Below are positions 201 to 54,300 of a DNA stretch of 64,000 nt, piece after piece (the first letter of the stretch is position 1; every line of letters starts with the position of its first letter). The translations under genes and the position numbers were made by a program. This DNA is from Ophelia neglecta. Taxonomy: Eukaryota. The notes under the pieces are model-generated. The model searched no databases. It saw only the letters and a program-made list of their open reading frames with translations, and had not been told where the DNA came from. The stretch lies in assembly GCA_965285935.1 (NCBI GenBank), contig OZ260663.1, positions 77,252,001-77,316,000 on the forward strand. Direction: 5' to 3'.

Positions 201-3200
201 ATTCATTCCGGGTTTGTGGGAGTTTGACAACGGTTTTTTCAATACTTCACCTAAAGAAGCATTGTCCATGGACCCTCAACAGTACCACGTCATGGAGGTA
301 ACTTTGTCGTTAGAAATATCTAAATTGCTTACCAATTATTCTTTGTACAACGCCTACCTCGCATTTATATTCCTAGGTGTTTTCTTTAAAATAAAATCAT
401 ACTGATATGTAGTAAATCTAATCGCCTAGCTATATACCTGATATTTTTTTAATATAATATATGTATTTTTGCACTATAGGTGACCCAAGAAGCCATGCAT
501 GACGCCGGTATGACATCTGCCAATATCCCCGTGAACACCGGGGTGTACATGAGTATGAAAATGGGTGAGCAGACCCTGGTGTGTGCCGAGAACCCCAACA
601 TCTTAAACCCATACATCCTCACAGGCGGCGCTCACACAGTCACAGCAAACAGGTAGGCAAACTACGAGAGCTAAAGGCTTCAATGTTTGAACACTCGTCA
701 GATAAATTTGATGACGCCACGGAGTTCGATGTATTAACTTTTTAAAGGATGGGAGTAGCGACAATGGGGGCTTAAGCTTTTAAATTAGACCAATGATTTC
801 ATGGTTCGTTTTAATATTTAAATTTCAAGAATCAGATTTCTTCTTTTGTCCGATTCCTATATTAACAAATGTAAATTAAGGAATTAAGGTTAAACTCACT
901 GCCGGTTAAAAAGGGACAAAAGCTTAAATGGTCTGTTTTTTTAACTGTTGTTTTCTTTTCCAGAGTGAACTTCTTTTACGATATAAGCGGCCCCAGTATG
1001 GGCGTGGAGGGCGCCTGCGGGGCAGCCGTTCACAGTATCCATTTCGGGGTGTGGGCTCTATGGAACAAAGAGTGCGATGCGATGATCGTGGGAGGCGTTA
1101 ACCACGTGTTGTCGCCACATTTCAGTGTCCAGCAGTGCGATCTCGGCTTTCTCAGCCCCAGTGGAAACTGCTCGCCCTTCGACGCCAATTCTGACGGCAG
1201 GGTGCGCGCCGAAGGTTGTGGAGTCATCATTCTTAAGACACTCGACGACGCCATCAAGTAAGAATAAAGAAATGCAACAACAAGAGGCTCTCATTACTAA
1301 ATAGTCTACCTGTATTCAAAATTATAAGTGCGGCTGGGCTTTCGCGAATTATTTTTAGCCCTCATTTGATGTTAAAATATTATATCGCTCTACCTTTTTA
1401 CATGGTTTTAAACATTTTAAACTATAATTCAATTGTTCCAGAAACAATGATCATGTATATGCCTGCATTCGGGCTTCTGCGCTTGGTTACCACGGAAAGC
1501 AGATGAACCTCCAGGACCACACATCTGAAGGCATTAACAATGTTATCTCGCCGCTTTATGATCGTTTCGGCATTAAACCAGACGACATCGACTACGTTGA
1601 GTGCAATGCCACAGGTAAGCATGGATTTATTTAGCCACTACATATATGTCGCTCACGCTAGAAATGTATCTCAAAGGCTACAATTTATAATTATGAGGAC
1701 AAAGTGTAACTGGAAGCAAAATGTATAGTTTTCTTCATTGCTATGGGTCTTGACAATCTGACGAGTATTCAATTGAATGGGAACCTAACGGTCAATATTT
1801 ACCCTTGTGTTTAGTATCTATTATCTGCAAATCACTTTTAAAAACACTCGTGGCTCCAAATGGCAATATTCTTCCATCAACTTCACGTGACCTCTTGCTG
1901 TTTTTCTCCCAGGGAACACCAAAGAGGACTTCCCGGAGTTCGAAGCAGTCGACTTGTTACACAAGGAAAGAAAGAACGCTGTCCGGGTTGGCTCAGTGAA
2001 AGGCAACGTCGGACATCAAGAGAATGCCTCAGGTATACTAATTTTCTATCAGATGCATTAGTCGCACTTTCTTTGTCAACAGAAATATGAATATAGCAGT
2101 AATAACAAGAAGATGACATGGCGTAAATTGCATGTGTCACCACCATACCAAGTTTAAACTACATTCTCATTGCAATATATCCTTGCATAATTGTTTCTTT
2201 AAAAAGAACCGTTTATTCCATCAATAGGAATGATGCAGACAATAAAGTGTGCCTTGATGTTGGACCATGAGGAGTTCTATAGCCAGAAGAACTTCAGTAA
2301 GAAGCATACTACGATAGAGGACCAAGGATGGCGACTTCAGGTACAAGATCAGTATGAGAAATACGACAAGGAGAAAAATATGATGGTGGCAGTCAACACG
2401 ACAGCCTTCACTGGACAGGTAGGATTGTGATTTGGCAACAATAAACTTATTTAATTTCTCCTCAAAAAAAATCTAGCTCATATTAGTCAATGATCCCATT
2501 TTGTAGATTATTAAACAGTTCTTATTCACACATTTGATGTAAAGTTTGCTGTTTGTTATAAAGGTGTGCCATTTAGTGTTGGAAAGTTACCGACCCCAGA
2601 TCGAGGCTCTGGTAATGAAGGATCTTGCTGGTTGGACATTCGGTGGAAACGATAGTGGCATCATGATTCCCATCACCATTACTGCTAAGACAAAGAACGC
2701 CCTGAAGGACCTGGCCAGGAAGTGGCTGGACTTCGAACATGAAAATGATGCAATGAGTATCGCTGGATGGCTGTCTACCAGAAGAGACCATTACGTCAAT
2801 GTAAGGATCAACCATTTCTGTGATATTTAGCTATGTTGTTGAAGATGTGTATACCCCCGACATCAATTGCTTTAGTTTTAGCATGAAGTGAAATGCCTCA
2901 CGAGTTTGAAAAAGAAGCGGTTTTAAATCTTTTACTTATTTACAGCGTTTGTGTGTAACTGCTAGATCATCCGATCACTTCCGGGAGTGTTTACGCAAAT
3001 ACATTGAAGGGACACCTTGTGATGACGTAACCGAAGGGGCAGCCCCAAACAAGTTTGAAGCACCAAAAATATGTTTTGTTTTCCCCGGCCAGGGACAACA
3101 GTGGTGGAATATGGGCCGCGAACTGTACGCTACCGAGCCGCTCTACAGGGACATAGTTGACAGGTTAGACTAACCATTGTGCCACTCAAGAACACAGCTA

Positions 3201-6200
3201 TTGGCTATTCAGATCAATTAATCACTTGAATATGTCTGAAATTTACTCATTCTATTTATATCATTACAGATGTGACGTCATATGGGAGGCGAACAGCGGC
3301 TACTCCTTCAAGAGGAAGGACGGCTTGTTTGTCGCCGACCCTGCTGGCTTGGATCCAGAAAGAATCGAAGAAATTATCGTCTGCCAGCCCGCCATTGTCT
3401 CTCACCAAATCGGCTTGGCTACCCTACTTATGCACTGGGGTGTAATACCAGATATTGTACTTGGCCACAGTCTTGGAGAGGTTAGTATTGCTTGAAAGTT
3501 TATTTTTTACTGTTTTGCCTAAAATTATAGTTATAAACTTTCCGAGTGTGAAATCAGCATGACAATTAAGACAACCAGTATTTATAACTGATTCTGAAAC
3601 TGTGCCTATAGATTCCTTTTTTCTATATAGGTAGCAACAGCATACATGGCCGGAACAATGACCTTGGAGGAGGCAATAACAAGTATCCACATCCGAGCGA
3701 CCTCCCAGAGCAAACTTACTGGCTCGGGCCATATGGCAGCGGCTAGGTAAGTTGCGTAAGCGTCTTCAGTATCTGCCTTTGAATAACACATTGCTCCCAG
3801 CAACCAGCGACCGTATACTGATACGGTTGTACTTTTCAAAACCTCTGGTTACACGTGTTGTGTCTTTGTTTCAGATATGGCCCAGAAGCAGCTGAAAAAA
3901 TGTGCGCTGGTTATGATGATGTATTCGTTGCCTGCTACAACTCCACAGAAAACGTCACTATTGCTGGTGCCAGACCAATCATGCGGCAGTTGGCTGAAGA
4001 ACAACCCACAAAATTAAAAATTATTCGCGTTCAGGCCGCTTTCCACACTGTGCTGGTTAATCCCGTGAAAGATGAATTTTATGAAAGAATGCAGGGTAAA
4101 TACACACCAAAGCCATGCAAAGATGAGCCCATTATGTACTCAACCGTCGTCAAAGACAAGCACAAGGGACCATGCGACCCTGATTATTGGTGGAACAATA
4201 TCTCCTGCCCAGTATTCTTTGTCCAGGCCAATAAGGCGCTCTTCCGAGATTATGGAGACAATGTTGTCTTTGTCGAGATAGCTTCAGCCGCCACATTAAT
4301 GTCTTCCATTCGACAGACCGCAAAAACATGCGGAGTCAGCCCCAAGGGGTACGTGGCCTGTGGCCTGAGGGGTAAGGATGACCGTTTTGCAGCCCTAAAG
4401 GGAGTGAGTCAGCTGTACGCCATGGGCTTCGATATCAACTGGGCCAACGTAACCAAAAATTGCTCCAGATACACACGTCTGCCAAAATACCCGTTTCAGA
4501 GTGTGCACTATCGTTTAGAGGCATCCCAGTTTACCAACCGACGACTAGGGCGAGAAGACAAATCTTATGTTGGCAGAAACGGCGAGATATCCTGCAATAT
4601 GCACCCCTTCCTTGCTGACTACTTGCTGGAAGACAAGGCACGTCTGCCCTCTTCTGGATCACTGGAGTACTTGGCTGAGCTGGTAGCTGATAGGGTGGTA
4701 TTGAAAGATATCACCATTCATGACAACCCTGTAATGATGACTGCGAAAGAAAACATCATCTGCGATTTCCTCAGTTTGTGGGTGGATAGCAAGATAACAG
4801 GAGACGAAGTGGCACTGAGGAGGAGGGACGACCTATCCCGCATTGCAACTGCCTATATCACCAGTGGGGGAAATGAAAATATCCCAGCGTCATTTGACTT
4901 ACAGGCAACTCGCAGTCGCTGTTCCACAAGCTTGGATGCCGACGAATTCTACAAGAACTTGGCAGTCAATGGGTTGTCCTATGGTGAAAGCTTTAAGATC
5001 ATGAACAATATCAACCTTGGAAGCGATGAAGCCATTACAAGCCTCAAACCAGAAGAGAATAAATATGAACGATTGAAGACGGTGTCCCTTGATGGTTGTT
5101 TCCAGCTGGCGATGGCTTCCTTTGGCTCCGGATCTCCTGCCCTGGTGAAAAGAATCAAGTACCTTGAAATGCTTGTCGATCGCCTACCAATGAAGCAAGA
5201 CCTGAATGCAGTGGCGATTCTAGTTGACTGGACGCCTTCTGCATTCATAGCAGATCTCTACTTGACTGACGAGGAAGGCGGTGTTCTTGTTGCACTCAAG
5301 GGCGTCTGTTTCGAAATTTCTAAATCCAATGTCACAAATGGAAATCTATTGGGAGATCTTTACACAACAAAGCTTGAAAAGGTTGGCATTGCCAACAAAG
5401 AAGTTCCCAAGACTCTGCAGGTGATTACATCTGGTGAATACACAACACTCGTCAACGAGCTGAAGTCAAACATTAGTGGGGCTGTTAGCACATCGCTGAA
5501 AGAGCTGAAGTCTGTAAACGAGGAGAGGCTTCAAGGTGCGACTTTGCTTTATATTTGGAGTCCAAAGCCATCTAAGAACCGGCGGGTATCCAGAAATGAG
5601 GCCAATGTTAGGGAAGGAGAACTTGATCAGTTGATAGAAGTAATTGAGTACTGTCAGATGGCGGCTCGTAAGGCTGACTTCACTCTTTGGGTGGTATCAA
5701 TCAGCGACGCCCCGACTACTGCTGACGCTATGGCCACTGGCTACCTCAGGAGCGTAACGAGCTCTCTGTCTCTACGACTCAATCAACTCAGTCTAACTAA
5801 ACCTGACTCAGGGGCCATTATCAAGGCGATCTGTACTGACTCAAACGCAACCGAGTACATTGGCGGCACTTCTGGCCTGAGCAACCCCATTGTACGACAC
5901 TTCACCACGGCCTCGCCGGCTCCTACTGGCGCATGGGATCTCAGCTTGGGATCTTCATCGACAAATAACGGATATGATCACAACGAAGCCAACTTTTGTA
6001 AAATGGACAGGGATTGGCTTAATAAAAGAAGGGGGATACATGAAAAATATGTCAAGGAAGAAGTTAAGAAGAGCACGGTCAAAAATCAAATATCCAGAGT
6101 ATATAAGGCCAAGGAGATACGGCCATTGAAATCAGGATACGCAAGGATCGCCATCCAAGCAATTGGTACAACAGATGGTGTCATTCAGTGCGCAGGTATT

Positions 6201-8351
6201 GTAACCGACGTTGGGTCAGATATGAAACAGTTCAAGACAGGTGACGAGGTAATAGCCTTACGAGCCAATACATTGACATCCTCTCTGGTGTCCAGCGAGA
6301 GAAATCTCGTTGCCAAGCCTTCAAAGTTGTCCTGGGCCGAGGCAAGCTGTTTTGGTCTTACATATGGCACGGCCTACCACACCCTAGTAGATATGGCTGA
6401 GATCCAGGATGGCGACACTGTCTTTGTCCACCCCACTGATAACGCTCTGGGACAGGCTGTTGTACAGATCGCTAGGTTAATGGGTGCCAAAGTGATTTGT
6501 TCTGGCAATGCCAGTGATCTAATCAGTAAGAACGGTATTGTAACGGTGGTAAATCCCAACTCAATCACATTGACCCGAGACATTCTTCAGCACACGGGGG
6601 GACGCGGCGTGGACATTGTGGTGGACACCTCGGGCGCCTCTATGAGCCAGGAGCTGATGGGCTGTGTAGCCGAGGATGGCAAGATCTGTCTCATTACGCT
6701 CAGCGGCACTAAACTTGCAGACTTCACAGTGTCTGACAGTATTACTACCATAGTTGTAGACGGCAGTGATCTGCTGAACAGAAACCGAGAATGCCTTAAA
6801 GAAAGTTTGAAAGAGGTGTCAAAGCTGGTTTCTTCTGCTGAAACGGGATCTGCCCAGTTGGCAGAAACCTCCTTAGCGAACATGAAGACCCCATTATCAA
6901 ATACAATTCAGGTGACTACAGTGCCTGAAGGGTTTGTTCCCAATAAGGTGGAGTATGGTAATCTGGGTCTTCTAGAAGATGCCACATACGTTGTAACATG
7001 TAGTAGTAATTTGCTCTCCCAGGCTCTGGTTGGCTGGCTTTCAGAGCGAGGCGCCAGACACCTGGCTCTTATCTCGGATGGTTCCGGCACTGCTCTTCGT
7101 CACCGCCTTCTTGTCGCTGGTCTGAAGTCCGCTGGAGTCAAGGTTTACGAGAAAGATGCTGACCTTACCAAACCCGACGAAGTCAAACAGTTCATGAGGT
7201 ATTTGGAAACAGAAGGAGCTCCTTGCATAAAAGGCATTTTCTACGTCGGCCTTCCCAGCCCAATTGATACACATCTCCGACAAGCGTCAGACACCGTCAA
7301 CGGTGCTACAAACTTGCACAACGAACTGCAATCCAGGAATGTCGTCCTTGATCATTTTGTTGTATTCTCTGATGCCGATGCTATGGTAGGATGTGCCAAG
7401 TCAACCGATGCCGTTGCAGCCGCCTGTGCCATGGACAGCTTTATTACTGAGATAAAGAATGCTGGTCTTCCCGGTCTGTCCCTGAAGATAGGTGCCATCC
7501 TAGGATCCAGGCGAGGAACATTCAGCACACCACTACCCGTTGATAACTACCTCTCAACCTTAGACGTCCTCCTTCAGGATCCCAGTGTCCCCGCCACTGT
7601 ATGTGCAGCCCAAATGGTAAGTTGAAATTTATTTCTCCACTCGATATTTCAGAAAGGCTTCATTTGATTTTTTGTTTTGCCTCAAACTAATACTTCAACT
7701 TTATTAAGGTAGTTATCATTTTAGCAATAATCTAATATTTATAATATTTCTTATTCATTCCAGTATTGGACTGCCGCAGTGCAAAATAATGCCAGAAATA
7801 AACATTCATTCGAGCACTTCGTTGAAACATCTTACCCAGCTAAAGGTAAGGGCGCTTTTTGTTACATATTTCCTATTGTATTCATGGTTTGCATAAGTGA
7901 CCTCTCAAGATTTAGACACATCGGAATTAAAATGTTCTGTTTTCACGTATCCTAGCCTGAATAATATAATTTTTGGTATTTTATAACGTACTGACTGACC
8001 TCTTCGTGAGGAGGGTTCCTCTTCTTTTGGGGTAAAGTGGCTTGTTCTGTACTGATGATTCGTTTGGCTGACATTGTGTTTACACTTTCAGCATTAGACA
8101 TTATGGGAGAGGAAATAGCAGACCAGGTTATCGACTACCTGCTGATGCAGACCGGATGGTCTGCTGACTATTTTGACTACTTTGAGAAGATCCCCATGAC
8201 CGAGTACGGTGTAGAATGCTACCTGCTTAGAGAGATGAACGTCTGGCTACAGAAGAGGTACAATGTGGCCGTGACACGCGATGACCTAGAATCGGGTCTC
8301 ACGGCGGAAGGCCTGGTAGAACGCATTCAAAAAGCATGCGGTGTCTTGTAG
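201..8351 (+). CDS. Type I polyketide synthase / FAS-like megasynthase (KS-AT-DH-ER-KR-ACP), 13 exons in window, 5'-incomplete; most domains appear catalytically degenerate
   Basis: Exons with GT-AG ends and consistent phase: 201-297, 480-652, 964-1257, 1442-1614, 1913-2032, 2228-2418, 2564-2800, 2946-3163, 3270-3480, 3631-3746, 3875-7616, 7764-7845, 8092-8351 (~1970 aa, TAG at 8349-8351). Motifs: FDNGFF..MDPQQ, ANRVNFFYDISGPS, EGACG, PFDA..RAEG, GSVKGNVGH (KS); VFPGQGQQW, GHSLGE, AFH (AT); LPKYPFQ linker; LDGCFQ (DH); TGGRGVDIVVD (ER); WLSERGARHL (KR); C-terminal ACP-like helical domain. Confidence 0.93.
3875..7616 (+). CDS. 3.7-kb exon of the PKS encoding the AT C-terminal half, DH-like, KR structural, ER-like and KR-like domains
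   Basis: Core of ORF 3855..7625; acceptor ttcag at 3870-3874, donor GTAAGT at 7617; uninterrupted frame with PKS domain motifs in canonical order. Confidence 0.92.
8092..8351 (+). CDS. Terminal PKS exon encoding an ACP-like domain lacking the phosphopantetheine serine
   Basis: IPMTEYGVECYLLREMNVWLQKRYNV aligns by eye to ACP consensus PLxxxGxDSLxxxELxxWLxxxF; acceptor tttcag ending 8091; in phase with exon 7764-7845. Confidence 0.8.
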
Positions 8352-8459
8352 ACCTATAATCTATTGTCACTTTCGTAAATGCAGTTACCGAATTATTGAA
8401 TTCAATGAAGTATAATGATAATTTCAGTTCAGAAAGAAAGTTAGAAAGTTTGATTTGAA

Positions 8460-24390: not shown

Positions 24391-27300
24391 CTGAAGCAAG
24401 TGCAAATTGAGCGGAAATCAATACAACTGCCTCGAAATAGAACTGCATACCAAACGAAAGTGACAGGAGAGACCGTTGTCAACGTACTAAATAAGGTTAT
24501 GGCAGCCGACATTGTGATGTCCGGCATAAAGCCAGGAGCGATGAGTTATATCAAAAAAGAATTGACTAACGTGTTTTCTTGTCATCAAAACACTAGTTTG
24601 AGAGGCGTTTCCACATTATACCTTCATATTAACCCAGTTTAATGACTAGCTGTGCACATAGGCCTAATACCTATAGGCATTATGTTATAGTAATTAGGTA
24701 TAAATGTTCAGTATAAAGAGAGTGTATTAATAGCCGACCTGATATGTAGGTTGAGAGGCGTTGTTGATGAAACTCGTCATGATCTCCTTTGGCACTGCCA
24801 CTACGGATACTACTGCCGTCGTCACGGCGTTGCTGCAGTTCAGTGAACCGAGCCTTCTCCAAACGGCGGGACCGTTTCACCTTCTGCCTGATAAAAAAAG
24901 GACAAAACTTTGAAAACAGAGGGGTGTAATTTATTGTTAACGAATAAAACTTATTTCCATTGACTGAAAGAAGCTAGCCATTTCTTAAATTGTCTTCCGC
25001 CTTCCCGAGAAAAAAGTGTACCCGATGGCTTTTTTCATTATCTTCTTTGAGAAAGAAAATCTAGTTCCGGTTCGAATTGAACTTGGCTACAGTGCGAACT
25101 CTACTGAAGAAATAATGTAAGTACAACTTCATTTATAAGGAGACAACTGGCAGGAAAAATTGCTGGCCAAATCCCAAAAAAGGAATTGCTCAGAGTCTAA
25201 AGGCAAAGAGAAATGCAGATGTTTGGTGATCAGTTTAAGTCATGAATATGTAAAGAGAAACCCGTTCGCCAAGTGATCTTCGTGTAGCTGGCAGGTGTGG
25301 TAGTCTTTTGTTCCGGTCTTTGCCTGTTTTCTTCAGCACTTAAGTTTACATGTGCCTGGTGCCAGAAAAATGGCTTTCACGACTCTGTGCTTGATATTTG
25401 AGCTAGCGAAATGCATCAAGTGTATGCTTCAATTTAATTCAATTGTTAAATTAGAGGAGGACTGAATGCCCAGAGTTTTTTTGTCTCCACTAATATCGAT
25501 TATCAATAGGCCGAAAAAATAGGACCAAATACAAGATACAATAATAGATTTTAGTTTGTTCAATGAAAATTTCCTTGGCGAAAGTAATACCGAAATGAAC
25601 TTCTTGTTCAGACAGAAACTAGAGTGCAGGTGTTTGGACAATGTCTGAGGTGTATGTAAAAAAGCCATTAATAACTCTAATTTATTAGGGTCAACTCTAA
25701 TTAAAAATATTTATTGTAGTCCGATTTATAGGTTCCTACTACCTGACTAGATAAAATGTTGAGAGTTAAGAACAGCTGTGCTTTGAGTAGATGTCGGATA
25801 TGTAAAATGACTGGCTTGTCCGGTTATTTGATTTGATTTGATTTGATTTCTTTATTCCTCCTTAGTAGGAGAGTTACAAATGAACAAAATTAATACGTTA
25901 CTATGTACAATAATTCACACATGACATAAAACAAAAGACAATTAAATTTAAGTATATTGTTGTACATTCGACACCGTTTATACATGTACAACCCATTTAT
26001 CATATATCACATATTGAAGGCCCATCACACTCAATTTGTACCCTCAACTACTGCCAATGTCTTATGCATTGACAAGCTTGTTCTTACGAGCTTGGTATAA
26101 ACTATAAATCTGAGAGGCGACAGCGCTGGCTGACTCCCCATCTCCCGCCAGGAGCCATTGCATAATGTCTGGGAAGGACCTGGTGTGGCTAGGGATCAAC
26201 CCGCGAATACCACTCCTGTCTACCTCCAACACAGGACACACTAACAGGAAATGCTTTGCATCTTCTACTTCAGAGCGACATAGTCTACAGAGCCTTGCAC
26301 CCCGTGGGATGTTCTCATATCGTCCCCTTGTCACTTCCAGATCCGAGTCCTCCAAAACCAGTTTCACCATGACTCGACACGCTGATAGCGCCGCGGGAAA
26401 TTTCAAAGACAATTTCCACCATCTGCTCATTTCCAATGAACCCCCTATCTTCCAAAACGTCTTTGCGCCAGGAAACACAAGGCAGGCTGCTCCGAGGTGT
26501 TGTCCCGTAGCGTAGGCAATGGCATGCTTCACTTGCCGTTTCCACTGCAATTTGGAGGGGATCGCACCTCGATAAATGGAGTCGTGTAGCAGATGGGACA
26601 GCCGAAACTTATGGCATGTGTCGATCATCGATGAAATCGGACCCGAACTGGATGGTTTAGCTTGTCCCAAATCATCTTCTATTACCCTGTATGTAACCAT
26701 GGTTCGTAATTGGGAACCAGGAGCGGCGCTCAACACACTATGTAGCAAGATTAACCGAAGGTAATCCAGCTCACACTCCAGTGGCCACCATCCTAGTGTA
26801 GCATAGCTTAGCGGCCCAGCTATATTTGCGGAGATACGCTGAAACCGTTTCCCGGCCTGTTTGTGAGCTCTCTCCAATCTATCAGTGTCGACCGAGCGAA
26901 GTTTAACCAGCTCAAGTCCGTACAGAAGACTCGGCATGACAATACTCTTGTAAAGTTTACTGGCCACCGCTGGCTGGACACCGTGGGCTGTGCTCCCGAC
27001 ACCAAACATAGCGTTTGTCTTCCTTCTCGCAGCAGACACTCTCGTCTCTATTACCTCACTGACGTAAGCGGGCGACGGAGACAGGGGAATACCAACGTGA
27101 CCACACCCTTGCGAGGGATTGACTTCCTGGTCACCTATCCGTAACGGGCGGTGGACGTTGGTTCTCTCTGCGGGAGGATGAAAAACCATATATACAGATT
27201 TACTGGGATTAAAGGAGAATCTCCAGCGTCGACTATATTCCAGGGTCGCATCCATCAACTTCTGTAGGTTGTTCAAAAACAAGGCCATGAGGGTTATGTC

Positions 27301-30300
27301 ATCTGCGTACGTCGGATTGCTGCAGGATGAGTGGAGGATTTGTGTCCCAACGTGCATCGCCTCCAAGGAGTTCAGCAGCTCGGCGCTGTAGACCTGATAT
27401 AGTCTTGGCGAGAACTTGCCTCCCTGGAACACCCCTTGCTTGATATCAAACCACTCCGATAGCATGGGCCCGATTCGTACCGCACATCTAAAGTTCATGT
27501 ACCAGAGCCGGAGCAGCCTCCACAGTTTCGCATTGATGCCCTTCTGGAAAAGTTTGAAAAACAACCCGTCAATCCAGACCCTATCGAAGGCCTTCCGAGT
27601 GTCTAACGATACAGCGTGCACGGAGCTTCCGCGGTCGTTATTGTAGGCTATGACCTCACGTACCAACAAAGACGCGTGTTTACTGGAGCATCCCTTAAAG
27701 GCGGCAACCTGTAGTCTCCCGAGGCGGTCGTTAGAAAGGAGCCAATCGTCACATCTGGCAAGCAAGGCGCCTTCGAACAGCTTGCAGAAAATAGTTAACA
27801 GTGTAATTTTCCTGTAGCTGTCCTTCTTGGTGGCATCTTTTCCTCCCCCTTTAAAAAAGGGTATGGCAATGCCTCTACGGAATGAGTCCGGAATGTATTC
27901 GTGCCTCACAATGCTGTTTAAAAGCACCGTTAATGCCACCGCGGTCAGTTTCCCACCGTAGTGGACGTGTTCAGGATCCACTTGATCGTGGCCCCCAGCC
28001 TTGTTGCACTTGACTTCTCTCATCAGGTGCATGGTCTCCTCTGGAGTGTATGGCTGAGTGAGAAATGGGCAAGTGTTGTACAATGACTGTTTTTCCATCT
28101 GGACTACATCACGCTCGACCCTGGCTTTAAACGCGCTATCGAACTCCTGGTCATTCGAGGGTGTGGCTAAGTCTTTAAAATACCTCCTCCACTCCTCACA
28201 CACTCCTTCCGCCGATACGATCCGTTCACCTACGTCCGAGTGTATAGGGTTTACTCGCGGTCCTTGAGGAGCTTTTCTTCGTTTGTTTACCAAAAACCAG
28301 AAGTACCTTTGGTCAACCTCATGTGATTCACACAAAGTTACTTGTTCATTGTGCTCATACTGGAACTCAGCTTGCCTTCTTTCCCGCCGGTACAGTCGCT
28401 TAGCTTCTTTGTACTCACGGTAAAGGGTGTTGTTCACATCTCGAGGTCTACCGGCAGCGTCCCACTCCCATTTCTTCCCGATGTTTTTGCGTTTAGCCTC
28501 CTTTAATGTCTGACTCCAATAAGGCTTAAGGTAGGGCTTGTAGCTTGATCGGGGCAAGTTTCTCTCGGACACGCCGCACATCACTCTCGCTAGGTCCTCG
28601 GCAAAGCTAGATATTGTTAAGGGAGCAATGACAAGCTCGTGCAAATTGCCTGAAAATGAGTAATCGCTGTAGCTATGAAGCATGTCGGCTATCTCTTGCT
28701 GTAGTGGTTCCGTGTATAAGTGGTTAACAGTCTCAGGGGTCATCTTGTGCCATCGTGTTTTCGGCTGACTGGTTAGGTGACGATTGACATGGGTGAGGCT
28801 ATTAATTGACAAAGACATTTGCAAGGGCAAGTGGTCCGAACTGTTTTCAACACAATTATTAACAACACACATGGATTGAATCATTTGTACCATAGAATTA
28901 GAAATTACACAGTGGTCGATATATGACATTCTGCCAACGCTGTTACAAAAGGTGTAAGTTGGCCCTGAACATAACTCAGTTAAATCTGCTATAGACAGTG
29001 ACAGCTCGTTACATAAATTTCGCAGAGCGTTACCATTTTTGTTTGTTGTTCCCCAACCCCTAGGACCACATTCCGGGCCGAGATGAGCATTAAAGTCCCC
29101 CATCAATACAACAGGTCCCTTCTCACGGTAACGACAAGTGATTTCATATAATTCATCAAATACATCATCAGAATTGCTGATTTTACAACTGTCATACGGC
29201 ACATACACACATATAATATAAATAGCTTGTTTCCCACAACTCACACGTACACCAACCAGCCTATCTGAGAAGGTATCAATCACAGTTGATCATATGCCTA
29301 TCCTAGTTAAAAGCAATAAGCAGAAATAACATCTGGATGCATGGTAACTCCTTTGAGAAGTGTATAGGTGATAGATTGAAGAGAGAAGGAGCGTTTTCGT
29401 GTGATCCAGTAACTAAGCTTGTAGCACTTTTCTCCTGCTTTATCAAATAAACCAAATACGATTAAAAGGTACCTCCTTACATCTTAATGCGATAGCTTAC
29501 AATTCGGAGAAAGTAATGTATCTTGCTGAAGTACTGGCTGGCCTTACACAAGACTCCCAATTCAGCACCGTGCTTATAGTAAGGCCAATATTGTCACCAC
29601 GCCAGCAAATGATTGTGTTTTCTGGATTATATGGAATGTCATAAAAGGATTTCTGGACATTTAACGCATGCGCATTACTGTGAATTTGCTCGTCACTGAT
29701 AATCTGCAAGACAACTAGGCCGCCGCATAAATGCAAAAAAACAGAGTGCTAGCCAATCAGAGCCGTGTTAGACGCTATAGGCCTATAGCGAATTTATAAA
29801 TGTAAAAACATAACCTCATGTAAGCCTACACAGAGATAAAAAGGCATATTAAAAATATTCGTAGCTGCGATACATTCCTGATGAAGCACATTAGTACCCG
29901 ATGCCATTATAAAAGGCCTAGCTAAGAACGGAAAATTTCGAGAATCTGACGAGTGAGTTTAAAAGCGATGGGGAAGGGAGAGGCATAATTATAAATTTGT
30001 CAGAGTGTCCAACGCTTCTGTTTTCTTTTTCATACATTAGTAAGTCTATGTTCTAAGCGTGGTAGCTTCCGCGATGATAGAGGGACGCGCGACAATGCAT
30101 CGAACTTGATATAGCCTATCAATGCAGTGAAAGGTTCGAGTCCGCTATAAACTGGCAGTATCTTTTCTCAGTTTTAAACACTTAATATGTATGTCGAATG
30201 ATTAACAAAAATTCCCGCGGGCAGGTGCCGTTATGGGATGTTGTTGTTCTGATATGTCCCGTTCGTAGCTAGCTACAGGCCTCTTATAATGGCATATATC

Positions 30301-45300: not shown

Positions 45301-48300
45301 CTAGGGGCAGAACCAGGATATTTAAAGGAACGTAGGAGATAGGTCATTTTCCTCCCAAAACTGCCGGATGGGTTCACTTAAGTGGTAAAGTTGGTATTCT
45401 AGAATGAGTTGGTGATAATAGAGGAAGTGCATGAGTTTCTGGTTCTGATTTTGTCGGAGATAATTTATTGCCATTTATTACACTAAGATCAAGTGAGCAA
45501 CTTGTAAAACAAATCGCTATCGAATTGATCGCAGCTCTGGCATAGCGAGGCTTGGCTGCCTTCAATCTCTGCCAGCCAAGATCGACCCGCCACTCTTGGT
45601 TTTTGTGCGAAATGTCTATATAAAAAAATTCTTTTTAAAAGCTTGATCGTTGATATGGGTCCCAAAGGATATGTAAATAGCGATCTTCAGTATTGTGGTC
45701 TTTTGTTAGACAAATATCAATGGTGACAATTGGGAAAAAATTCTAAATTGATTGGAAGCTATTCGAGCGAGGCATAGGTACTCTCACTCTTACTTAATAA
45801 TATCCCGTTCACCATCTCGTTCAACAAACTATAATATTGCCAATTGCGAAAGACCTGAAAGTTTGAAAAATTGTCAGAATCTGTTACCCTGTTCCCTGTC
45901 ATCCTTAGTGACAAAATGTAACACTTTGAAAAATGGATTAGTTAAGCCACTTTAAATTGTTTCAAACAGTCAGAACACCTATCGGTACATGAAAAAAATA
46001 AAATGAGAGGTCTGCATCATCAAATAAAGAGAACAATGAAACCAGATCGACAATCAGTCATTGACCACATTAGCTGCTACACTGGTGAAAACATAGGAAC
46101 TTTGTGAATTTGACCTTGACAAAATAATCTCAATGTCATTGCATTTTAGGCATTCTTATCACCAGAAACCTCATGTACCAACTATTAATTACCATCATTG
46201 TTACGGTTTGGGTGGCTTATTTCTAAAAAGCATAACAGTTGACAGGTAGGACTACTAGGAAAGCTATTGTTGGGTGTCAAACATGATCATTCTATTTATT
46301 CTAAATAATTAGTTCGTAAAAGAGGTTTTTTTGCTTACGGACTCCAATAGTCTTATAGCCTCGATCGAACAGAATCCTAGCTTGTTTGAGGTTTTTGCGT
46401 TAAAATAACTACCTGTTTCCGCATACTTAATAAGTGTTATTGATCTGTTGGAGTGTATGAAAAAATATTGCAGATTATTCTGCAATTTTTTGGGTGAAAG
46501 AAAATATAGTTTTAAACACTATAGCAATTACTTGTATTTCCACTCGACCGATCCATACTTTCACTGTTGTAATGCGGTCAATGAGGCATTCGGTATTTCT
46601 CTGCAGTCAGAATAATGTCGATGATGCATTCGACATTATCGTGCGACGAGAACGCCGCTACCGCACAATATAGCCGAATGCGGCATTGACAGCTTTTCAG
46701 AGTGGTTCATTTTCATTATCAACCCAACCGACCTGACCAACACGTTTGTCCCCTTACTTTAAACGAGAGCGCCCGCCCGATCTTTTCCCCATAACACACA
46801 AAGGAGACCGATAAAAGTTTAGAGGGGAAGGAAATTGCATAAGATACTTAATACAGCAGTGAACGTCGTTTGGACAATGGAACCCTCGGTTATTGGCCAA
46901 ACGACACTAAATTTCAAGCGAACCCAGGAACACTTGGCTCGACAGGCCGAGAAAGCAATATTCAAAATGCGTGGCTTGCAGAGAAAACTCTATCAGTCCC
47001 CTACAGACATACTAGCAGACTTTGAAACGCTTGTAGTACCTATTCTTACGTACGGAAGCGAGGTGTGGGGCTTCCATCATGCACGGGACGTAGAAGCTGT
47101 GTATAATAAGTTCTATAAAGGGACGTTGGGTGTGAAAGCTTGTACTCCTACCTTCATGTGGGTATTGGAGTGTGGTGCGCTGCCATTTAGAGCAAAACTA
47201 GAGTTAAGAATGTTGTCATTTTGGGCAGGTCTTTGCGACCCTAGTAGATGTACAGAGAAACTTGCCACTAAGGTGTTAAAGGAAATGTCAAAGGAAAGTT
47301 ACAGTAATTGGGCATGTTATGTCAGAGACTTGTTGTATTCACTGGATTTACACCAATACTGGAACAGTCAAATTGTGTCAAACAAAAAGAAATTTATGTA
47401 TGTGGTAAAAAACAAATTATTTAATAAAGTTGAAAATGAGTATAAATTGAAATTAGAAGAAAGTAGCAAAGCTAGATTGTATAAAAACCTTGTGCCTAAA
47501 CCTAGTTTAAAACACTGTAACTGGTACTTTAATAACATCGACAGAAGACACATTGTTACTATAACGCGGTTTAGACTCCGCAATCACAGATTGGCGGTAG
47601 AGAGTGGAGACTGGTTTGGTTTAGACATGAGTGAGAGAATTTGTTTTACTTGTGGTGTCCTCGAGGACGAAATTCATTTTGTGTTTGATTGTATAAGGTA
47701 CGCTCATTTCAGAAACAAATATATACTACCAAAGTATCTAGTAATGCAGGATAAGCTTGAGGCACTGGTAAAACTGCTGAATAGTCAAGAACGGAGGGAG
47801 TTAGATAATCTAGGACTGTACCTTACGAAAGCCTTGAAGCTACATAAGGAATATGCTGAACAATTTTTATTAATCACTGACAATGAGATATTTAATTAAC
47901 TAATGCATTACTTTAGGTTTCATTATGTTTAACTTTTGTAGGGTGAGGTTTCAATGTATTGTCGCTAATGTATTTGCACTGTAATATTTATCAGTCGCAT
48001 GTTTTTCTGATCGGCCAATGTAGGCAACGTATTTTGTATAGAGCACAATGCCTTAATAAACTATTGAAATTGAATTGAAATTGAACTAAATTGTTTTATC
48101 AATTCAGGCCGCAAAATGAAATATTAATGGCTGGGCCTGTTTGCAGCGTTTGGCCCTTCAATAAGCAATTTACCCTCGGGAGTTATGCATGCAAACACAG
48201 CCAAGGATCGCCGGAAATCTCGCAAGTCGCATAAAAATGCAAACCATTATAAAGGGAGATGAATATGAGGAGCATAAGAAAGCCGATAAATGTTTTGATT

Positions 48301-51300: not shown

Positions 51301-54300
51301 AAATATATATATATACCGATATATATAACATGTCCCCTATTCATGGGCCTGCATGCCCGTAAGTAAAGTATATTAGGTCAAGCAATATCCACCGGTAGCA
51401 TCGAAAGTCCCGCATACATCCAATTAATTTGGAACTCTTAAATATTCAAGTTCTGAAGCAACCATCCAGGCCGCAAGCACGTGTCACATTAGTCACCAGT
51501 CTCTATCCGAATCGTCCAAACAACATGTGCTAGGGTAAGCATGCTGAACAAGTCGGATGCGGAAAGGGATGTAGTAGATTTGAAGACATGTTCCGGACAA
51601 ATTGTAAATGGCTTTCTTTAACTAGAGTTTGTGATCATTTGCTGGTGAAAAACGGAGATAAGCAGCGGGAAGCCATCGATTTAGACTGCCACGTGAGTGA
51701 CGTCAAAGGGCTCAGCTTTAACCCCGGTTTACACAGAGGATTAAAGACACAGTATATATGGGTTAAGACTAAAGCAACAATAATGCCATGGCTCTCCATA
51801 TTGCAAAAATAAGATTGTGGATAATCGAAACTGTGGGCTTAGACTATAGGCAAGTTAATCAAGTTTATTTTCTCGCCGGTGCCGGTCTGAGGGTTTATTG
51901 AACCTGTTGGATGAAGGACATGCTTCCTTGAGGTATTTCAATCCAGACACTGCAGGAAATTAAAACAGCTGTCCAATTACTCCTTTGTCATAATTGAGCA
52001 AAGCTAAGTTAGACTTGCCTGGTAATATAAATGTTGCTCCAGTACTGGTAAATATTTATTGGCTAGACACATCCCCCCCCCTCACCTTTTGAGTTAAGGC
52101 GGCAATACAGAGTTAGTGGGTTTTGGTCCACAAGCACATGGTGCCTGTGGTTAGGGATATGCGATTCTGGTTTTGGTTCTTATTGGATCAACCACAATAA
52201 AGGTTCTAAGTCATGTTTTATGACTGTGATGAAGGAGGCGGGGACTATAGACAGCACGTTGGCGGGTTACTCTGCTCGTTGTCTTTCTTCAAAAGTAGCA
52301 GCTCACAGATAGGCCTATACTTGGTCCCAGAAACTGTGATTGGTGAAGGCGCTTTGCACCTATCAACCCTCTCTGAGTCAAATGGCATTGAAATAAATAA
52401 TAAAAATAAACTTAGAAATAATTACATTAGGTCAGAATCTCGAAGTTGGAGGGACAGTCACAAAAGTATGCATATGTGATAATTTGTGTTGGGCGGAGAA
52501 CCGGACTATGATTTACACAATGGACTCGTATGTCCGCTGCTCAACGAGTTGGGAGAGAAATTTATTCCTCGATATTTCTGGTTATCACCGTCTCCTGAGA
52601 AACTAATATCACTGTTTCTGTCAGACACTTCTATTAATACTAACTAAGTTCATTTTTAAAGTGCACCAAACACATTTAAGTTATTAACAAGATCAATCCG
52701 TGTAAGACCTGTGAGACAAATTGAATGTGTTATCCATTGAAAGTGTGTTACACGAAAGCATTCAATTATTAATGCGATAATCCCATATAAGATGTTTGGG
52801 CCAAATTTGTATGTTATTCATTTGAAATTGTGCAACATAAAATCGTTAAAATTATCATTATGAACACCGTGTGTAAGAGCTGTTAGTCTTATGGAATCTG
52901 TAATTAATTGAAAGTCTGTATGTACTATAGTGAAAGCTTAAAACCTTGTATACCAGGTTATAGCAATAAAACAATTTGGTTTAAAATTTGATTTGGTTAA
53001 TGCTGCTAGCCGCCAAAATGAATATATGACTGTGCTTTACTATAGACCGTCACGTTTTTTTATCCGAGAACCTATACTCTTCCTCCAATTCCGTGTTGCT
53101 TTATTCTGGCTGTGATAAACCCGCGGTCCAGTTGTACTAAATACCACCCAAAGGGGTTCACGACACGGGCAATATCGATTGTTAGACGGGGGCAAAACTC
53201 AAGGGGGCCAAGATGAAAGGGCGGAATGGTCAATTATGGACAAAATATCCCTGTAGGCATAACGCTGATAGATTAAATATTTTCAGTACGTACATGTCTT
53301 TTCTCGTAGGAAGAGTAATAACTGAAGATTGATCACGACAAACGCTGGAGGGAAATATTCCAAAACGGGACATGTTCTCTTTGTATGCTCATTTTCTCGA
53401 CCGTAGAGATTTACATGCATGTATATAAACGTAAGCACCAGCTTATCTGAAAAAAACATGCATTCCTAAAGTTTAACAAGTAAATAATAAGATTTACCTG
53501 AGTATTTCAGCAAGAAATAATACTCCTTTTCCGTCTCGACATTCCTGCGAGTAATAATCCTAATTTCTATCGAGTGAGACCGAGAGGTGTAAACAGTCCG
53601 CTCTCTGACACTGCCGCCACAGATTTTTTTGCTGCCATTTGCGCGGGACTTTTCCGTGATGATGGCGTACTGGTAACATATTTTTGAGTCGAGGATGTCG
53701 TGTCTGATGCCGGCTGTTGGTGTAGTGAAGTCGAAGAGGGTGACGTTGATCCGCTGCCCCCTCTGAACGGTAATCCTCCAGGGACATTTCAGGGAGCCAT
53801 AGTCGTCTCTCTCCGTGATCACATTGGCCAGGTAGCCCGAGGAGGAGGACAGCTGGATGTACTGGGGTTTTTCAGGATCACATGGCTTATTTCGAGGCAT
53901 CTCAGCTGAAAACGAAATACAATTCATGTCACGGTCGATACAGTAGATGATCTCATATATTATGATCTAACCGGAAAAAGAGAAGAGCGAGCCTGGCATA
54001 AACGATTCAACTATGTGCAAGAAGCAGAATAAGAGAAACAGGCCCGTATTCAGAACGAGTTGCGAATTCCGTACGCCCTCAATCTAAATGAATAAAATGT
54101 TCGTAATTCGTTTAAGTATGTGACCTAGTCGATAACACAAGGGAAGAGAGCCCAAAGTACCTGCTACGAAACGAAATTAAGGCAAAAGGAATCAATTTAA
54201 TACCAATGTTTTGTTGATTTATAAAGCAAAGGAAAATGGCCGTAGTAGATATATACATATAGTTATACATTTTTCATATATAGGCCTAGAGGATATATTT

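What the first reader, a model, noticed from the sequence alone, without database searches (positions are those of the whole stretch)
201..8351. Intact, spliced animal PKS in which every domain except the acyltransferase has lost key catalytic residues (pseudo-enzyme megasynthase)
Seen: ~1970 codons over 13 exons with no stop or frameshift and canonical splice sites, yet KS HGTGT reads NATGN, the DH His is Tyr, the ER and KR Gly-rich NADPH motifs are gone, the KR Tyr is absent and the ACP GxDS reads GVEC. The AT keeps GHSLG, its Arg and AFH. Established: these residues are required for chain extension, dehydration, reduction and phosphopantetheinylation in type I PKS/FAS. Inference: targeted loss at many active sites without frame damage suggests selection for fold rather than catalysis. 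Possible roles are a trans-acting AT on a megasynthase scaffold, a non-catalytic heterodimer partner of an active paralogue (conceptually like the KS/CLF pair of type II PKS), or a regulator. I do not recognise such an arrangement as described for animal PKSs, but cannot verify novelty without a search.
Basis: partly seen in the sequence, partly recalled or inferred. Interest (0 to 1): 0.9.

Follow-up and report, generated by a model that had tools for sequence, protein, structure and literature searches.

The report
Acyltransferase-only half of split PKS
This intact animal polyketide-synthase gene keeps only its acyltransferase active, while a sister gene 1.3 Mb away keeps only the ketosynthase and carrier domain, so the two paralogues look like two halves of one enzyme.

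Summary
Window 201-8351 holds 13 GT-AG exons (1,971 codons). Two more exons just upstream supply the ATG, giving a 2,043-aa KS-AT-DH-ER-KR-ACP-like protein with no stop. The KS reads Cys-Asn-His, the DH His is Tyr, both NADPH motifs and the KR Tyr are gone, and the ACP Ser is Cys. All AT residues are kept.

This is not recent decay. The gene belongs to a small annelid family, here called type A (11 sequences), that shares these losses and always keeps the AT. Within-species variants are 21 synonymous to 1 nonsynonymous. The predicted DH-ER-KR fold is confident.

The same chromosome carries a sister paralogue, type B or PAR1. Its KS triad and ACP Ser are intact, but its AT is dead (Ser to Gly plus a deletion of about 85 aa). 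This holds in all 7 type B sequences. A and B are sister clades, and both occur in three datasets.

Best reading (0.58): after duplication each copy lost different domains. A supplies the AT, and B supplies the KS and ACP, either as a heterodimer or with A acting in trans.

No RNA data exist for this organism, and binding and product are untested. I found no description of such a pair.

The parts
201..297 (+). Exon 3 of 15 (first exon inside the window). Encodes the KS N-terminal part.
   Evidence: Matches Pfam PF00109. tblastn to P0001 and P0004. GT-AG borders.
480..652 (+). Exon 4, KS.
964..1257 (+). Exon 5, KS. Holds the active-site Cys, which is kept (motif at 1010-1027).
   Evidence: PF00109 at 2e-25. 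Alignment to PDB KS chains places the Cys under the canonical Cys. Coordinates.
1442..1614 (+). Exon 6, KS C-terminal part. It ends in the degenerate HGTGT motif, where His1 is Asn (codon 1605-1607).
1913..2032 (+). Exon 7, KS. The second His is kept (motif at 2005-2019).
2228..2418 (+). Exon 8, end of the KS.
2564..2800 (+). Exon 9, KS-AT linker.
   Evidence: One synonymous variant.
2946..3163 (+). Exon 10, start of the AT. The GQG motif is kept (3084-3101).
   Evidence: PF00698..
3270..3480 (+). Exon 11, AT. The GHSLGE motif with the nucleophile Ser is kept (3463-3480).
   Evidence: PF00698..
3631..3746 (+). Exon 12, AT. The carboxylate-binding Arg is kept (motif at 3691-3708).
3875..7616 (+). 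Exon 13, 1,247 codons. Contents in order:
- End of the AT, with the AFH His kept (4035-4049).
- DH with its His replaced by Tyr (4620-4622).
- psiKR-like linker.
- ER without GGVG (6426-6458).
- KR without the Gly-rich motif (6990-7025) and without Lys or Tyr (7296-7424).
   Evidence: Pfam KR, ADH_zinc_N, PS-DH and Acyl_transf_1. Motifs. AlphaFold model with pLDDT 83.5 matches the MAS and FAS modifying regions.
7764..7845 (+). Exon 14, a short linker exon.
   Evidence: Similar to the Capitella P0004 C-terminal linker, and the splice fits the frame. PAR1 has an equivalent small exon.
8092..8351 (+). Exon 15, a carrier-protein-like domain in which the phosphopantetheine Ser is Cys (GVEC at 8205-8222). 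The stop codon is at 8349-8351.
   Evidence: A profile of 7 type A C-termini hits only ACP and PCP chains in the PDB. Pfam PP-binding matches 3 of the 7 members. No member has the Ser.

Best explanation
The gene encodes the 'type A' member of a pair of paralogous animal type I PKSs that appear to have divided the catalytic work after a duplication.

Type A, the window gene, keeps a complete acyltransferase. Its other domains survive only as folded, non-catalytic scaffold:
- the KS lacks the decarboxylation His;
- the DH lacks its His;
- the ER and KR lack NADPH sites;
- the carrier domain lacks the Ser.

Type B is PAR1, at G000:C5:75,968,276-75,975,664 on the minus strand, 1.28 Mb away. It keeps a canonical KS Cys-His-His triad and a carrier domain with the Ser. 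Its AT has lost the Ser and His and about 85 residues.

Inferred mechanism: the AT of A loads malonyl (extender) units onto the holo-ACP of B, and the KS of B does the condensations. The two could work in either of two ways:
- As an A:B heterodimer joined through the two KS domains. The KS of A would then play a CLF-like structural role.
- With A acting as a trans-AT on a B dimer.

Because DH, ER and KR look inactive in both proteins, the product is expected to be an unreduced (aromatic or pyrone-type) polyketide. It may be sulfated, given the sulfotransferase gene conserved next to B.

Shown here: the motifs, the phylogeny, co-occurrence of the two types, purifying selection, and fold retention. 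Inferred: the functional coupling, the mode of association, and the product.
For: Reciprocal active-site pattern:
- All 11 type A sequences keep the AT Gln, His-Ser, Arg and His.
- 8 of 10 type A sequences lack KS His1, and 4 of 10 lack the KS Cys.
- All 7 type B sequences keep the KS Cys-His-His triad.
- All 7 type B sequences lack the AT Ser and His, and share a deletion that removes the AFH His.
- The Pfam AT match in PAR1 covers only positions 2-116 of 319.

Carrier domain:
- The Ser is absent in 7 of 7 type A C-termini, which read C, I, L, I, N, Y and R.
- The Ser is present in 4 of 4 type B carrier domains.

Phylogeny and distribution:
- A and B are each monophyletic (support 100) and are sisters (support 97), nested inside animal PKSs.
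- Both lack the DH His, so that loss came before the duplication.
- Both types occur together in this genome, in Paralvinella palmiformis and in sample ERZ25069296.

Selection and fold:
- Variants in the window gene are 21 synonymous to 1 nonsynonymous, against 421 synonymous and 1,481 nonsynonymous sites.
- dN/dS is below 0.3 in the dead domains of subclade A2.
- The modifying-region model has pLDDT 83.5 and matches 5bp4 at E=1e-59.

Feasibility from the literature:
- In animal FAS the ACP can use the KS and MAT of either subunit. Dimers inactivated at the ACP and the KS on opposite subunits stay partly active (Rangan 2001, as cited in PMC12058525).
- KS domains that lack the HGTGT His are treated as non-elongating KS0 domains (PMC4661987).
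Against: - There is no RNA evidence for this gene. The only public runs that hold it are DNA.
- A and B are 1.28 Mb apart and are not clustered.
- Each pattern is a trait of a whole clade. The reciprocity therefore rests on a few evolutionary events, not on 18 independent observations.
- No type B protein was found for Capitella, or for several samples that hold only one type. Those searches were incomplete.
- Two type A members (P0001, P0162) still have KS His1, so the KS loss is not uniform.
- B could instead be loaded by another transferase, such as the FAS MAT or the mitochondrial MCAT.
Confidence: 0.58

Rival explanations
1. Type A works on its own. It would be a stand-alone acyltransferase, or an acyl-CoA hydrolase or transacylase, carried on a megasynthase scaffold. 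It would serve some other carrier or acceptor, such as FAS, the many FAS-like genes on contig C7, or a small molecule. Type B would be loaded by a different transferase or by ACP self-malonylation. The complementarity with B would then be coincidental.
For: - The AT is the only fully conserved catalytic site in all 11 type A sequences.
- The genome holds many other KS-containing loci that could be clients.
- A and B are not adjacent.
- Several datasets show only one of the two types.
Against: - This does not explain why about 1,500 residues of dead KS, DH, ER, KR and ACP-like sequence stay under purifying selection and are predicted to fold.
- It does not explain why the sister paralogue lost exactly the AT.
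- Discrete ATs are normally small proteins (from my own knowledge).
Confidence: 0.2
2. The KS of type A is not dead. Its Cys-Asn-His site would carry out a non-decarboxylative step, such as starter or chain transfer or gate-keeping, as in a KS0 domain. Type A would then contribute two activities, not one.
For: - The window protein keeps the Cys and the second His. Asn can still hydrogen-bond.
- KS0 domains that keep the Cys are thought to pass chains on (PMC4661987).
- P0001 and P0162 even keep His1.
Against: - The Cys is replaced by Ser or Asp in 4 of 10 family members.
- Capitella P0004 has lost all three triad residues.
- No KS chemistry is therefore conserved across the family.
Confidence: 0.12
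3. The gene is an unexpressed or decaying copy, that is, a pseudogene in the making.
For: - Many active-site losses.
- No RNA run is available to show a transcript.
- Type A diverges faster than type B between two related genomes: 33-62% identity against 52-65%.
Against: - The gene has 15 exons with intact GT-AG borders and 2,043 codons without a stop.
- The same losses are shared by relatives as distant as Capitella and Paralvinella, so they are old. All of those genes are still open.
- Variants run 21 synonymous to 1 nonsynonymous.
- dN/dS is well below 1.
Confidence: 0.04
4. The protein is a non-enzymatic regulator or structural protein, and its conserved AT motifs serve only for ligand (malonyl-CoA) sensing.
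For: Pseudoenzymes often become regulators (from my own knowledge). The AT pocket is the only conserved site.
Against: The full catalytic set (oxyanion Gln, the His-Ser pair, Arg and His) is invariant in 11 of 11 sequences. That is more than ligand binding would need. The matching hole in type B points to catalysis.
Confidence: 0.06

Closest known systems
Animal type I iterative PKSs of the 'polyketide synthase 1' clade (relatives here: Ptychodera P0068, Anneissia P0099, Owenia P0065)
   Same: Same domain order, KS-AT-DH-ER-KR-ACP. The window protein nests within this animal clade in the KS-AT tree. Identity is about 25-31%.
   Different: Those proteins keep every catalytic motif. The window protein keeps only the AT set, plus the KS Cys and second His.
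Trans-AT PKS systems of bacteria and algae
   Same: One synthase has no working AT, only a remnant after the KS (type B here). A separate protein supplies the AT activity (type A here). PMC4661987 describes displacement of AT domains in trans in algae.
   Different: Here the AT donor is a full-length degenerate paralogue of the synthase itself, not a small discrete AT. The system is in an animal and arose by duplication and reciprocal loss. The coupling is inferred, not shown.
KS/CLF (KS-alpha/KS-beta) heterodimer of type II PKS
   Same: A pair of paralogous KS folds in which one partner has lost condensation residues. That partner would act structurally beside the active one.
   Different: Here the two KS folds sit inside 2,000-aa megasynthases. 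The window KS still has its Cys. Heterodimer formation is untested.
Non-elongating KS0 domains
   Same: The HGTGT His is lost while the Cys is retained (PMC4661987).
   Different: KS0 domains sit in modular assembly lines and hand chains on. Here the Cys is not conserved across the family.
Engineered FAS heterodimers used for mutant complementation (Rangan, Joshi and Smith 2001, as cited in PMC12058525)
   Same: Two subunits, each inactivated in different domains, together give an active synthase. The ACP can reach the KS and MAT of either subunit.
   Different: Those are laboratory mutants of a single gene. This would be a natural version, fixed in evolution and encoded by two genes.
Structural pseudo-domains of FAS and PKS (psi-MT, psi-KR)
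   Same: Catalytically dead domains are kept because they hold the architecture together (PMC10764717).
   Different: In those cases one or two pseudo-domains sit in an otherwise active enzyme. Here five of six domains are of that kind.

Membership tests
Type I PKS/FAS megasynthase (by homology) | Domain order KS-AT-DH-ER-KR-ACP, recognisable by profile searches | tested here: met
   Pfam finds ketoacyl-synt, Acyl_transf_1, PS-DH, ADH_zinc_N and KR. The carrier-like C-terminus is detected by a family profile. The model matches DH-ER-KR modifying regions.
Catalytically competent type I PKS | KS Cys-His-His triad | tested here: not met
   The triad reads Cys-Asn-His.
Catalytically competent type I PKS | Carrier domain with the phosphopantetheine Ser (GxDS) | tested here: not met
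   The motif reads GVEC. The Ser is absent in 7 of 7 family members.
Catalytically competent type I PKS | AT with GQG, GHSxG, Arg and the xAFH His | tested here: met
   All are present, and invariant in 11 of 11 type A sequences.
Reducing PKS (active DH, ER, KR) | DH HxxxGxxxxP His; ER and KR Gly-rich NADPH motifs; KR Lys-Ser-Tyr | tested here: not met
   The DH has Tyr for His. The ER GGVG and the KR GGxGxxG motifs are absent. No Lys or Tyr sits at the KR positions.
Animal PKS clade (as opposed to AFPK or FAS) | The KS-AT region groups with animal PKSs in a tree | tested here: met
   A+B nest among animal PKS sequences, with bacterial PKSs as outgroup. No FAS or AFPK sequences were in the tree, so exclusion from AFPK rests only on the best hits.
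Trans-AT system (functional analogy) | A partner synthase that lacks a working AT | tested here: met
   PAR1 and 6 orthologues have the AT Ser replaced by Gly, the His lost, and an ~85-aa deletion.
Trans-AT system (functional analogy) | The AT protein acylates the partner's ACP | not testable with these tools
   This needs biochemistry.
KS/CLF-like heterodimer | Physical heterodimer of the two KS folds | not testable with these tools
Pseudogene | Stops, frameshifts, broken splice sites, or neutral evolution | tested here: not met
   The frame is open and the splice sites are GT-AG. Variants are 21 synonymous to 1 nonsynonymous.

The most novel reading that the evidence does not exclude
Annelids carry an obligate heterodimeric type I PKS made of two paralogous megasynthases that underwent reciprocal domain death: A keeps the AT, and B keeps the KS and ACP. 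This would be a natural counterpart of the classic FAS mutant-complementation heterodimers. In it, the ACP of one subunit must use the AT of the other on every cycle.
Probability: 0.3. Interest if true: 0.88.

Novelty: new variant of a known kind. Interest (0 to 1): 0.78.

Why it matters
Type I PKSs and FASs are textbook homodimers in which each chain carries a full set of active sites. A conserved natural pair with the active sites split between two full-length paralogues would matter in four ways:
- It would be a clear case of subfunctionalisation at the level of domains within one enzyme.
- It would give a natural system for asking which subunit's AT and KS an ACP uses. Until now that question has been approached only with engineered FAS mutants.
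- It would show that animals evolved a trans-AT-like arrangement independently of bacteria and algae.
- It would point to an uncharacterised, probably unreduced and possibly sulfated, polyketide in annelids.

It is also a practical warning for genome mining. Either gene scored alone looks non-functional, yet the pair has the minimal KS, AT and ACP set.

Tried and rejected
- RNA evidence. The look-up of sequencing runs found only three runs from one sample. When laid on 2500-8400 they proved to be genomic DNA contigs, with introns covered and no joints. Expression and splicing of the window gene are therefore untested. The runs were useful only for their variants.
- Complex prediction. It gives no verdict and no evidence either way.
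- PDB sequence searches with the two small KS exons. One returned spurious polyubiquitin repeat hits and the other returned nothing. I took these motifs from alignments instead.
- dN/dS between the window gene and its nearest relative (L023) was not attempted. The proteins are only 33-62% identical, so synonymous sites are saturated. I used subclade A2 instead. There dS is also saturated in many domains, so those ratios are rough upper-range estimates.
- A search for a Capitella type B protein, or for more type B fragments, found only one further unnamed fragment.
- The search of earlier findings returned only this same finding.
- No second PKS lies in window 8400-64000.
- The flanks upstream of the gene (L002, L003) hold no long ORF.
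- Literature searches found no description of this family or of reciprocal-loss megasynthase pairs. The library searched is incomplete.
- Handling of the spliced model. The joined protein was built only inside scripts, from the stored files, for local alignment and trees. It was never sent to a search or fold tool. Those searches were run exon by exon, by reference.


Full report
**1. What is in the window**

The window is G000:C5:77,252,001-77,316,000. Six-frame reading, Pfam and tblastn with the nearest homologues show one plus-strand gene. Junction enumeration left one GT-AG solution per intron that keeps the frame open and matches the homologues.

The window holds 13 exons, from 201-297 through 8092-8351. 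They total 5,914 nt, or 1,971 codons.

The gene starts outside the window. Two further exons lie at L003:9238-9292 (with the ATG) and L003:9788-9950. The full model has 15 exons and 2,043 codons, with no stop and no frameshift.

I assembled the joined protein only inside scripts, for local alignment. All database, family and fold searches were made exon by exon, by reference.

**2. The motifs**

I aligned the model with canonical bacterial and animal PKSs.

| Domain | State in the window protein |
|---|---|
| KS | Cys kept (also aligned to solved KS chains); first His is Asn (HGTGT reads NATGN); second His kept |
| AT | GQG, GHSLGE, Arg and AFH His all kept |
| DH | HxxxGxxxxP reads YxxxDxxxxP |
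| ER | GGVG gone, plus a deletion of about 22 aa |
| KR | Gly-rich turn gone; no Lys or Tyr at the catalytic positions |
| C-terminal exon | Carrier-protein homologue; the Ser is Cys |

The carrier-protein assignment rests on two results. A profile of seven family C-termini hits only ACP and PCP chains in the PDB. Pfam PP-binding matches 3 of the 7.

The only nuance is that the KS is partly, not wholly, stripped.

**3. It is an old family, not recent decay**

Database searches found a small family, here called type A. Its members are:
- Capitella teleta P0004;
- Paralvinella palmiformis P0003, P0006 and P0306;
- unnamed ENA and Logan sequences P0001, P0002, P0005, P0007, P0161 and P0162;
- locus L023.

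The motif states across the family:

| Feature | Type A sequences |
|---|---|
| All AT catalytic residues | kept in 11 of 11 |
| DH His | absent in 11 of 11 (Tyr, Cys or Val) |
| ER GGVG | absent in all |
| KS His1 | absent in 8 of 10 |
| KS Cys | absent in 4 of 10 |
| Carrier Ser | absent in 7 of 7 (C, I, L, I, N, Y, R) |

The losses therefore predate the split of these annelid lineages, and every gene is still open.

**4. Selection and fold**

No RNA run exists for this organism. The three public runs that hold the gene are DNA contigs from one sample. Their differences from the assembly are still informative. Of the 40 variants listed, 18 lie in introns. Of the 22 in exons 2564-4994, 21 are synonymous and 1 is nonsynonymous. 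The sites available were 421 synonymous and 1,481 nonsynonymous. That indicates strong purifying selection, at least over the linker, the AT and the first part of the DH. A further 52 variants were not printed.

For the dead domains I used three loci of subclade A2 (L014, L016, L024). Synonymous sites are saturated or nearly so. Where a ratio can be computed, it is about 0.12 for DH, 0.06-0.24 for ER, 0.17-0.18 for KR and 0.06-0.17 for AT. These are rough values, but far from 1.

An AlphaFold model of residues 900-1930 (DH-psiKR-ER-KR), built with a 32-row alignment, has mean pLDDT 83.5 and pTM 0.76. It is poorly predicted only in a lineage-specific insert. It matches the whole modifying region of a MAS-like PKS (5bp4, E=1e-59) and of human FAS (TM 0.62). 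The fold appears to be kept while the chemistry is not.

**5. The complementary paralogue**

A Pfam KS scan of the whole assembly gave many KS loci. The one closest to the window gene is on the same contig, 1.28 Mb upstream on the minus strand. I call it PAR1.

PAR1's main exon is L004:911-7384, an open frame of 2,157 codons that contains KS, AT, DH, ER and KR. It also has a short 5' exon, a small linker exon and a final exon at L004:276-503. Its last two introns sit where introns 13 and 14 of the window gene sit.

PAR1 has the opposite pattern to the window gene:
- The KS triad is fully canonical.
- The carrier exon has GVDS, with the Ser.
- In the AT, GHSLG reads GVGLG and the GQG motif is lost.
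- About 85 residues of the AT, including the AFH His, are deleted.
- Pfam matches only positions 2-116 of the 319-position AT profile.

PAR1 belongs to a conserved family, type B: P0041-P0046, including Paralvinella P0044. All 7 type B sequences keep the KS triad, and all 7 share the dead and shortened AT. All 4 type B carrier domains seen have the Ser. Type B also lacks the DH His, the ER motif and the KR Tyr, but most members keep the KR Gly-rich turn.

**6. Relationship and co-occurrence**

I built a maximum-likelihood tree of the KS-AT region from 32 sequences. A is monophyletic (support 100), B is monophyletic (100), and A+B form a clade (97) nested among animal PKSs. The nearest other clade still has KS, AT, DH His and ACP Ser intact, but its ER is already degenerate.

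The likely order of events is:
1. ER decay.
2. Loss of the DH His in the A+B ancestor.
3. Duplication.
4. Reciprocal loss: the AT in B, and KS His1, KR and the ACP Ser in A.

Both types occur together in three datasets:
- this genome;
- Paralvinella palmiformis, with three A genes and one B gene;
- sample ERZ25069296, with A at L023 and B at L019.

Between this genome and that sample, B is 52-65% identical and A only 33-62%. That fits weaker constraint on A.

**7. How it most likely works**

Neither protein alone has the minimal KS, AT and holo-ACP set. Together they have exactly one working copy of each. The most economical reading is that A supplies the acyltransferase to B.

This could take two forms:
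- An A:B heterodimer joined through the KS domains, with A's KS acting like a chain-length-factor partner.
- A working in trans on a B dimer.

Published work on animal FAS supports the first form as geometrically feasible. The ACP can use the KS and MAT of either subunit, and dimers inactivated at the ACP and the KS on opposite subunits retain partial activity. KS domains that lack the HGTGT His are treated in the literature as non-elongating.

With DH, ER and KR inactive in both partners, an unreduced polyketide is expected.

A sulfotransferase gene (PF00685) lies head-to-head with type B in two places. In this genome it is at L013:5185-5796, about 7.5 kb from PAR1. In the related sample it lies within 3 kb. 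The product may therefore be sulfated. This is a lead only.

**8. What is not shown**

- Expression of the window gene.
- Any physical or kinetic link between A and B.
- The product.

The reciprocity is made of a few clade-level events, so the sequence counts must not be read as independent trials. Capitella and some samples show only one type, but the searches there were incomplete. B could be loaded by another transferase. The rivals I keep are a stand-alone transferase role for A (0.2), residual non-canonical KS chemistry (0.12) and a sensing or regulatory role (0.06). Pseudogene status is largely excluded (0.04).

**9. Comparison with what is known**

By homology the protein is an animal type I PKS, but it fails the tests for a catalytically competent one. 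It works most like the AT donor of a trans-AT system and like the silent partner of a KS/CLF pair. It is not a member of either family in the sense of descent.

I found no paper describing this annelid family, or any natural pair of full-length megasynthase paralogues with reciprocal domain loss. The library searched is incomplete.

I rate it a new variant of a known kind, with interest 0.78.

Noticed in passing
G000:C5:75,968,276-75,975,664 (L004, minus strand), 1.28 Mb upstream of the window: Paralogue PAR1 (type B). It has a 2,157-codon main exon with no introns from KS to KR, plus a 5' exon, a small exon and an ACP exon. The KS and the ACP Ser are intact and the AT is dead. The window gene, by contrast, has 10 introns within KS-AT.
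   Followed up: yes
L013:5185-5796 (+) = G000:C5:75,983,185-75,983,796; also L019:1-276 (-): A sulfotransferase (PF00685, 9e-58) lies head-to-head with the type B PKS gene. The same arrangement is seen in the related sample ERZ25069296. This is conserved microsynteny and hints at a sulfated product.
   Followed up: partly
G000 contig C7 (about 16.8-17.5 Mb, 85.76-86.04 Mb, 90.4, 93.9 and 95.9 Mb); also C8:48.76 Mb, C8:72.5 Mb, C8:76.95 Mb, C5:22.83 Mb, C12:3.66 Mb: There are many further KS-containing loci. On C7 they form tandem arrays of multi-exon genes, probably an expanded FAS/PKS-like family. I did not characterise them.
   Followed up: no
window 26062-29283 (-): A 1,073-aa open frame with an endonuclease and a reverse transcriptase (PF14529, PF00078). 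This is a LINE-type retrotransposon, and it sits in the GC-rich patch of the window.
   Followed up: partly
window 53466-53927 (-): An ORF with a weak CUB-domain match (E=5e-4). It is probably an exon of an unrelated gene.
   Followed up: no
window 46835-47899 (+): A 354-aa open frame with no Pfam match.
   Followed up: no
window 3758-3863 (intron 12 of the gene): One run's contig shows 14 single-base differences plus a 1-base deletion within about 105 bases. This is a strongly diverged haplotype in the intron, and it contrasts with the almost purely synonymous changes in the exons.
   Followed up: partly
L023:1811-4915 (-): In the related sample's type A gene, an intron carries an LTR-retrotransposon remnant (RVT_2, rve, gag_pre-integrs). 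A second copy of the first coding exon lies downstream at L023:17552-17710, so a tandem copy is possible.
   Followed up: no
L015 (Logan contig of SRR26183964): The type B protein P0042 is encoded contiguously across positions that are introns in three genomic type B loci. This contig is therefore probably a spliced transcript, which would be indirect evidence that type B is expressed in that species. The contig ends in an Illumina adapter.
   Followed up: partly
protein residues 1376-1421 (window about 5952-6089): A lineage-specific, Lys/Asn-rich insert lies between the psiKR-like part and the ER. It is absent from all relatives and is predicted to be disordered (pLDDT 32-37).
   Followed up: no
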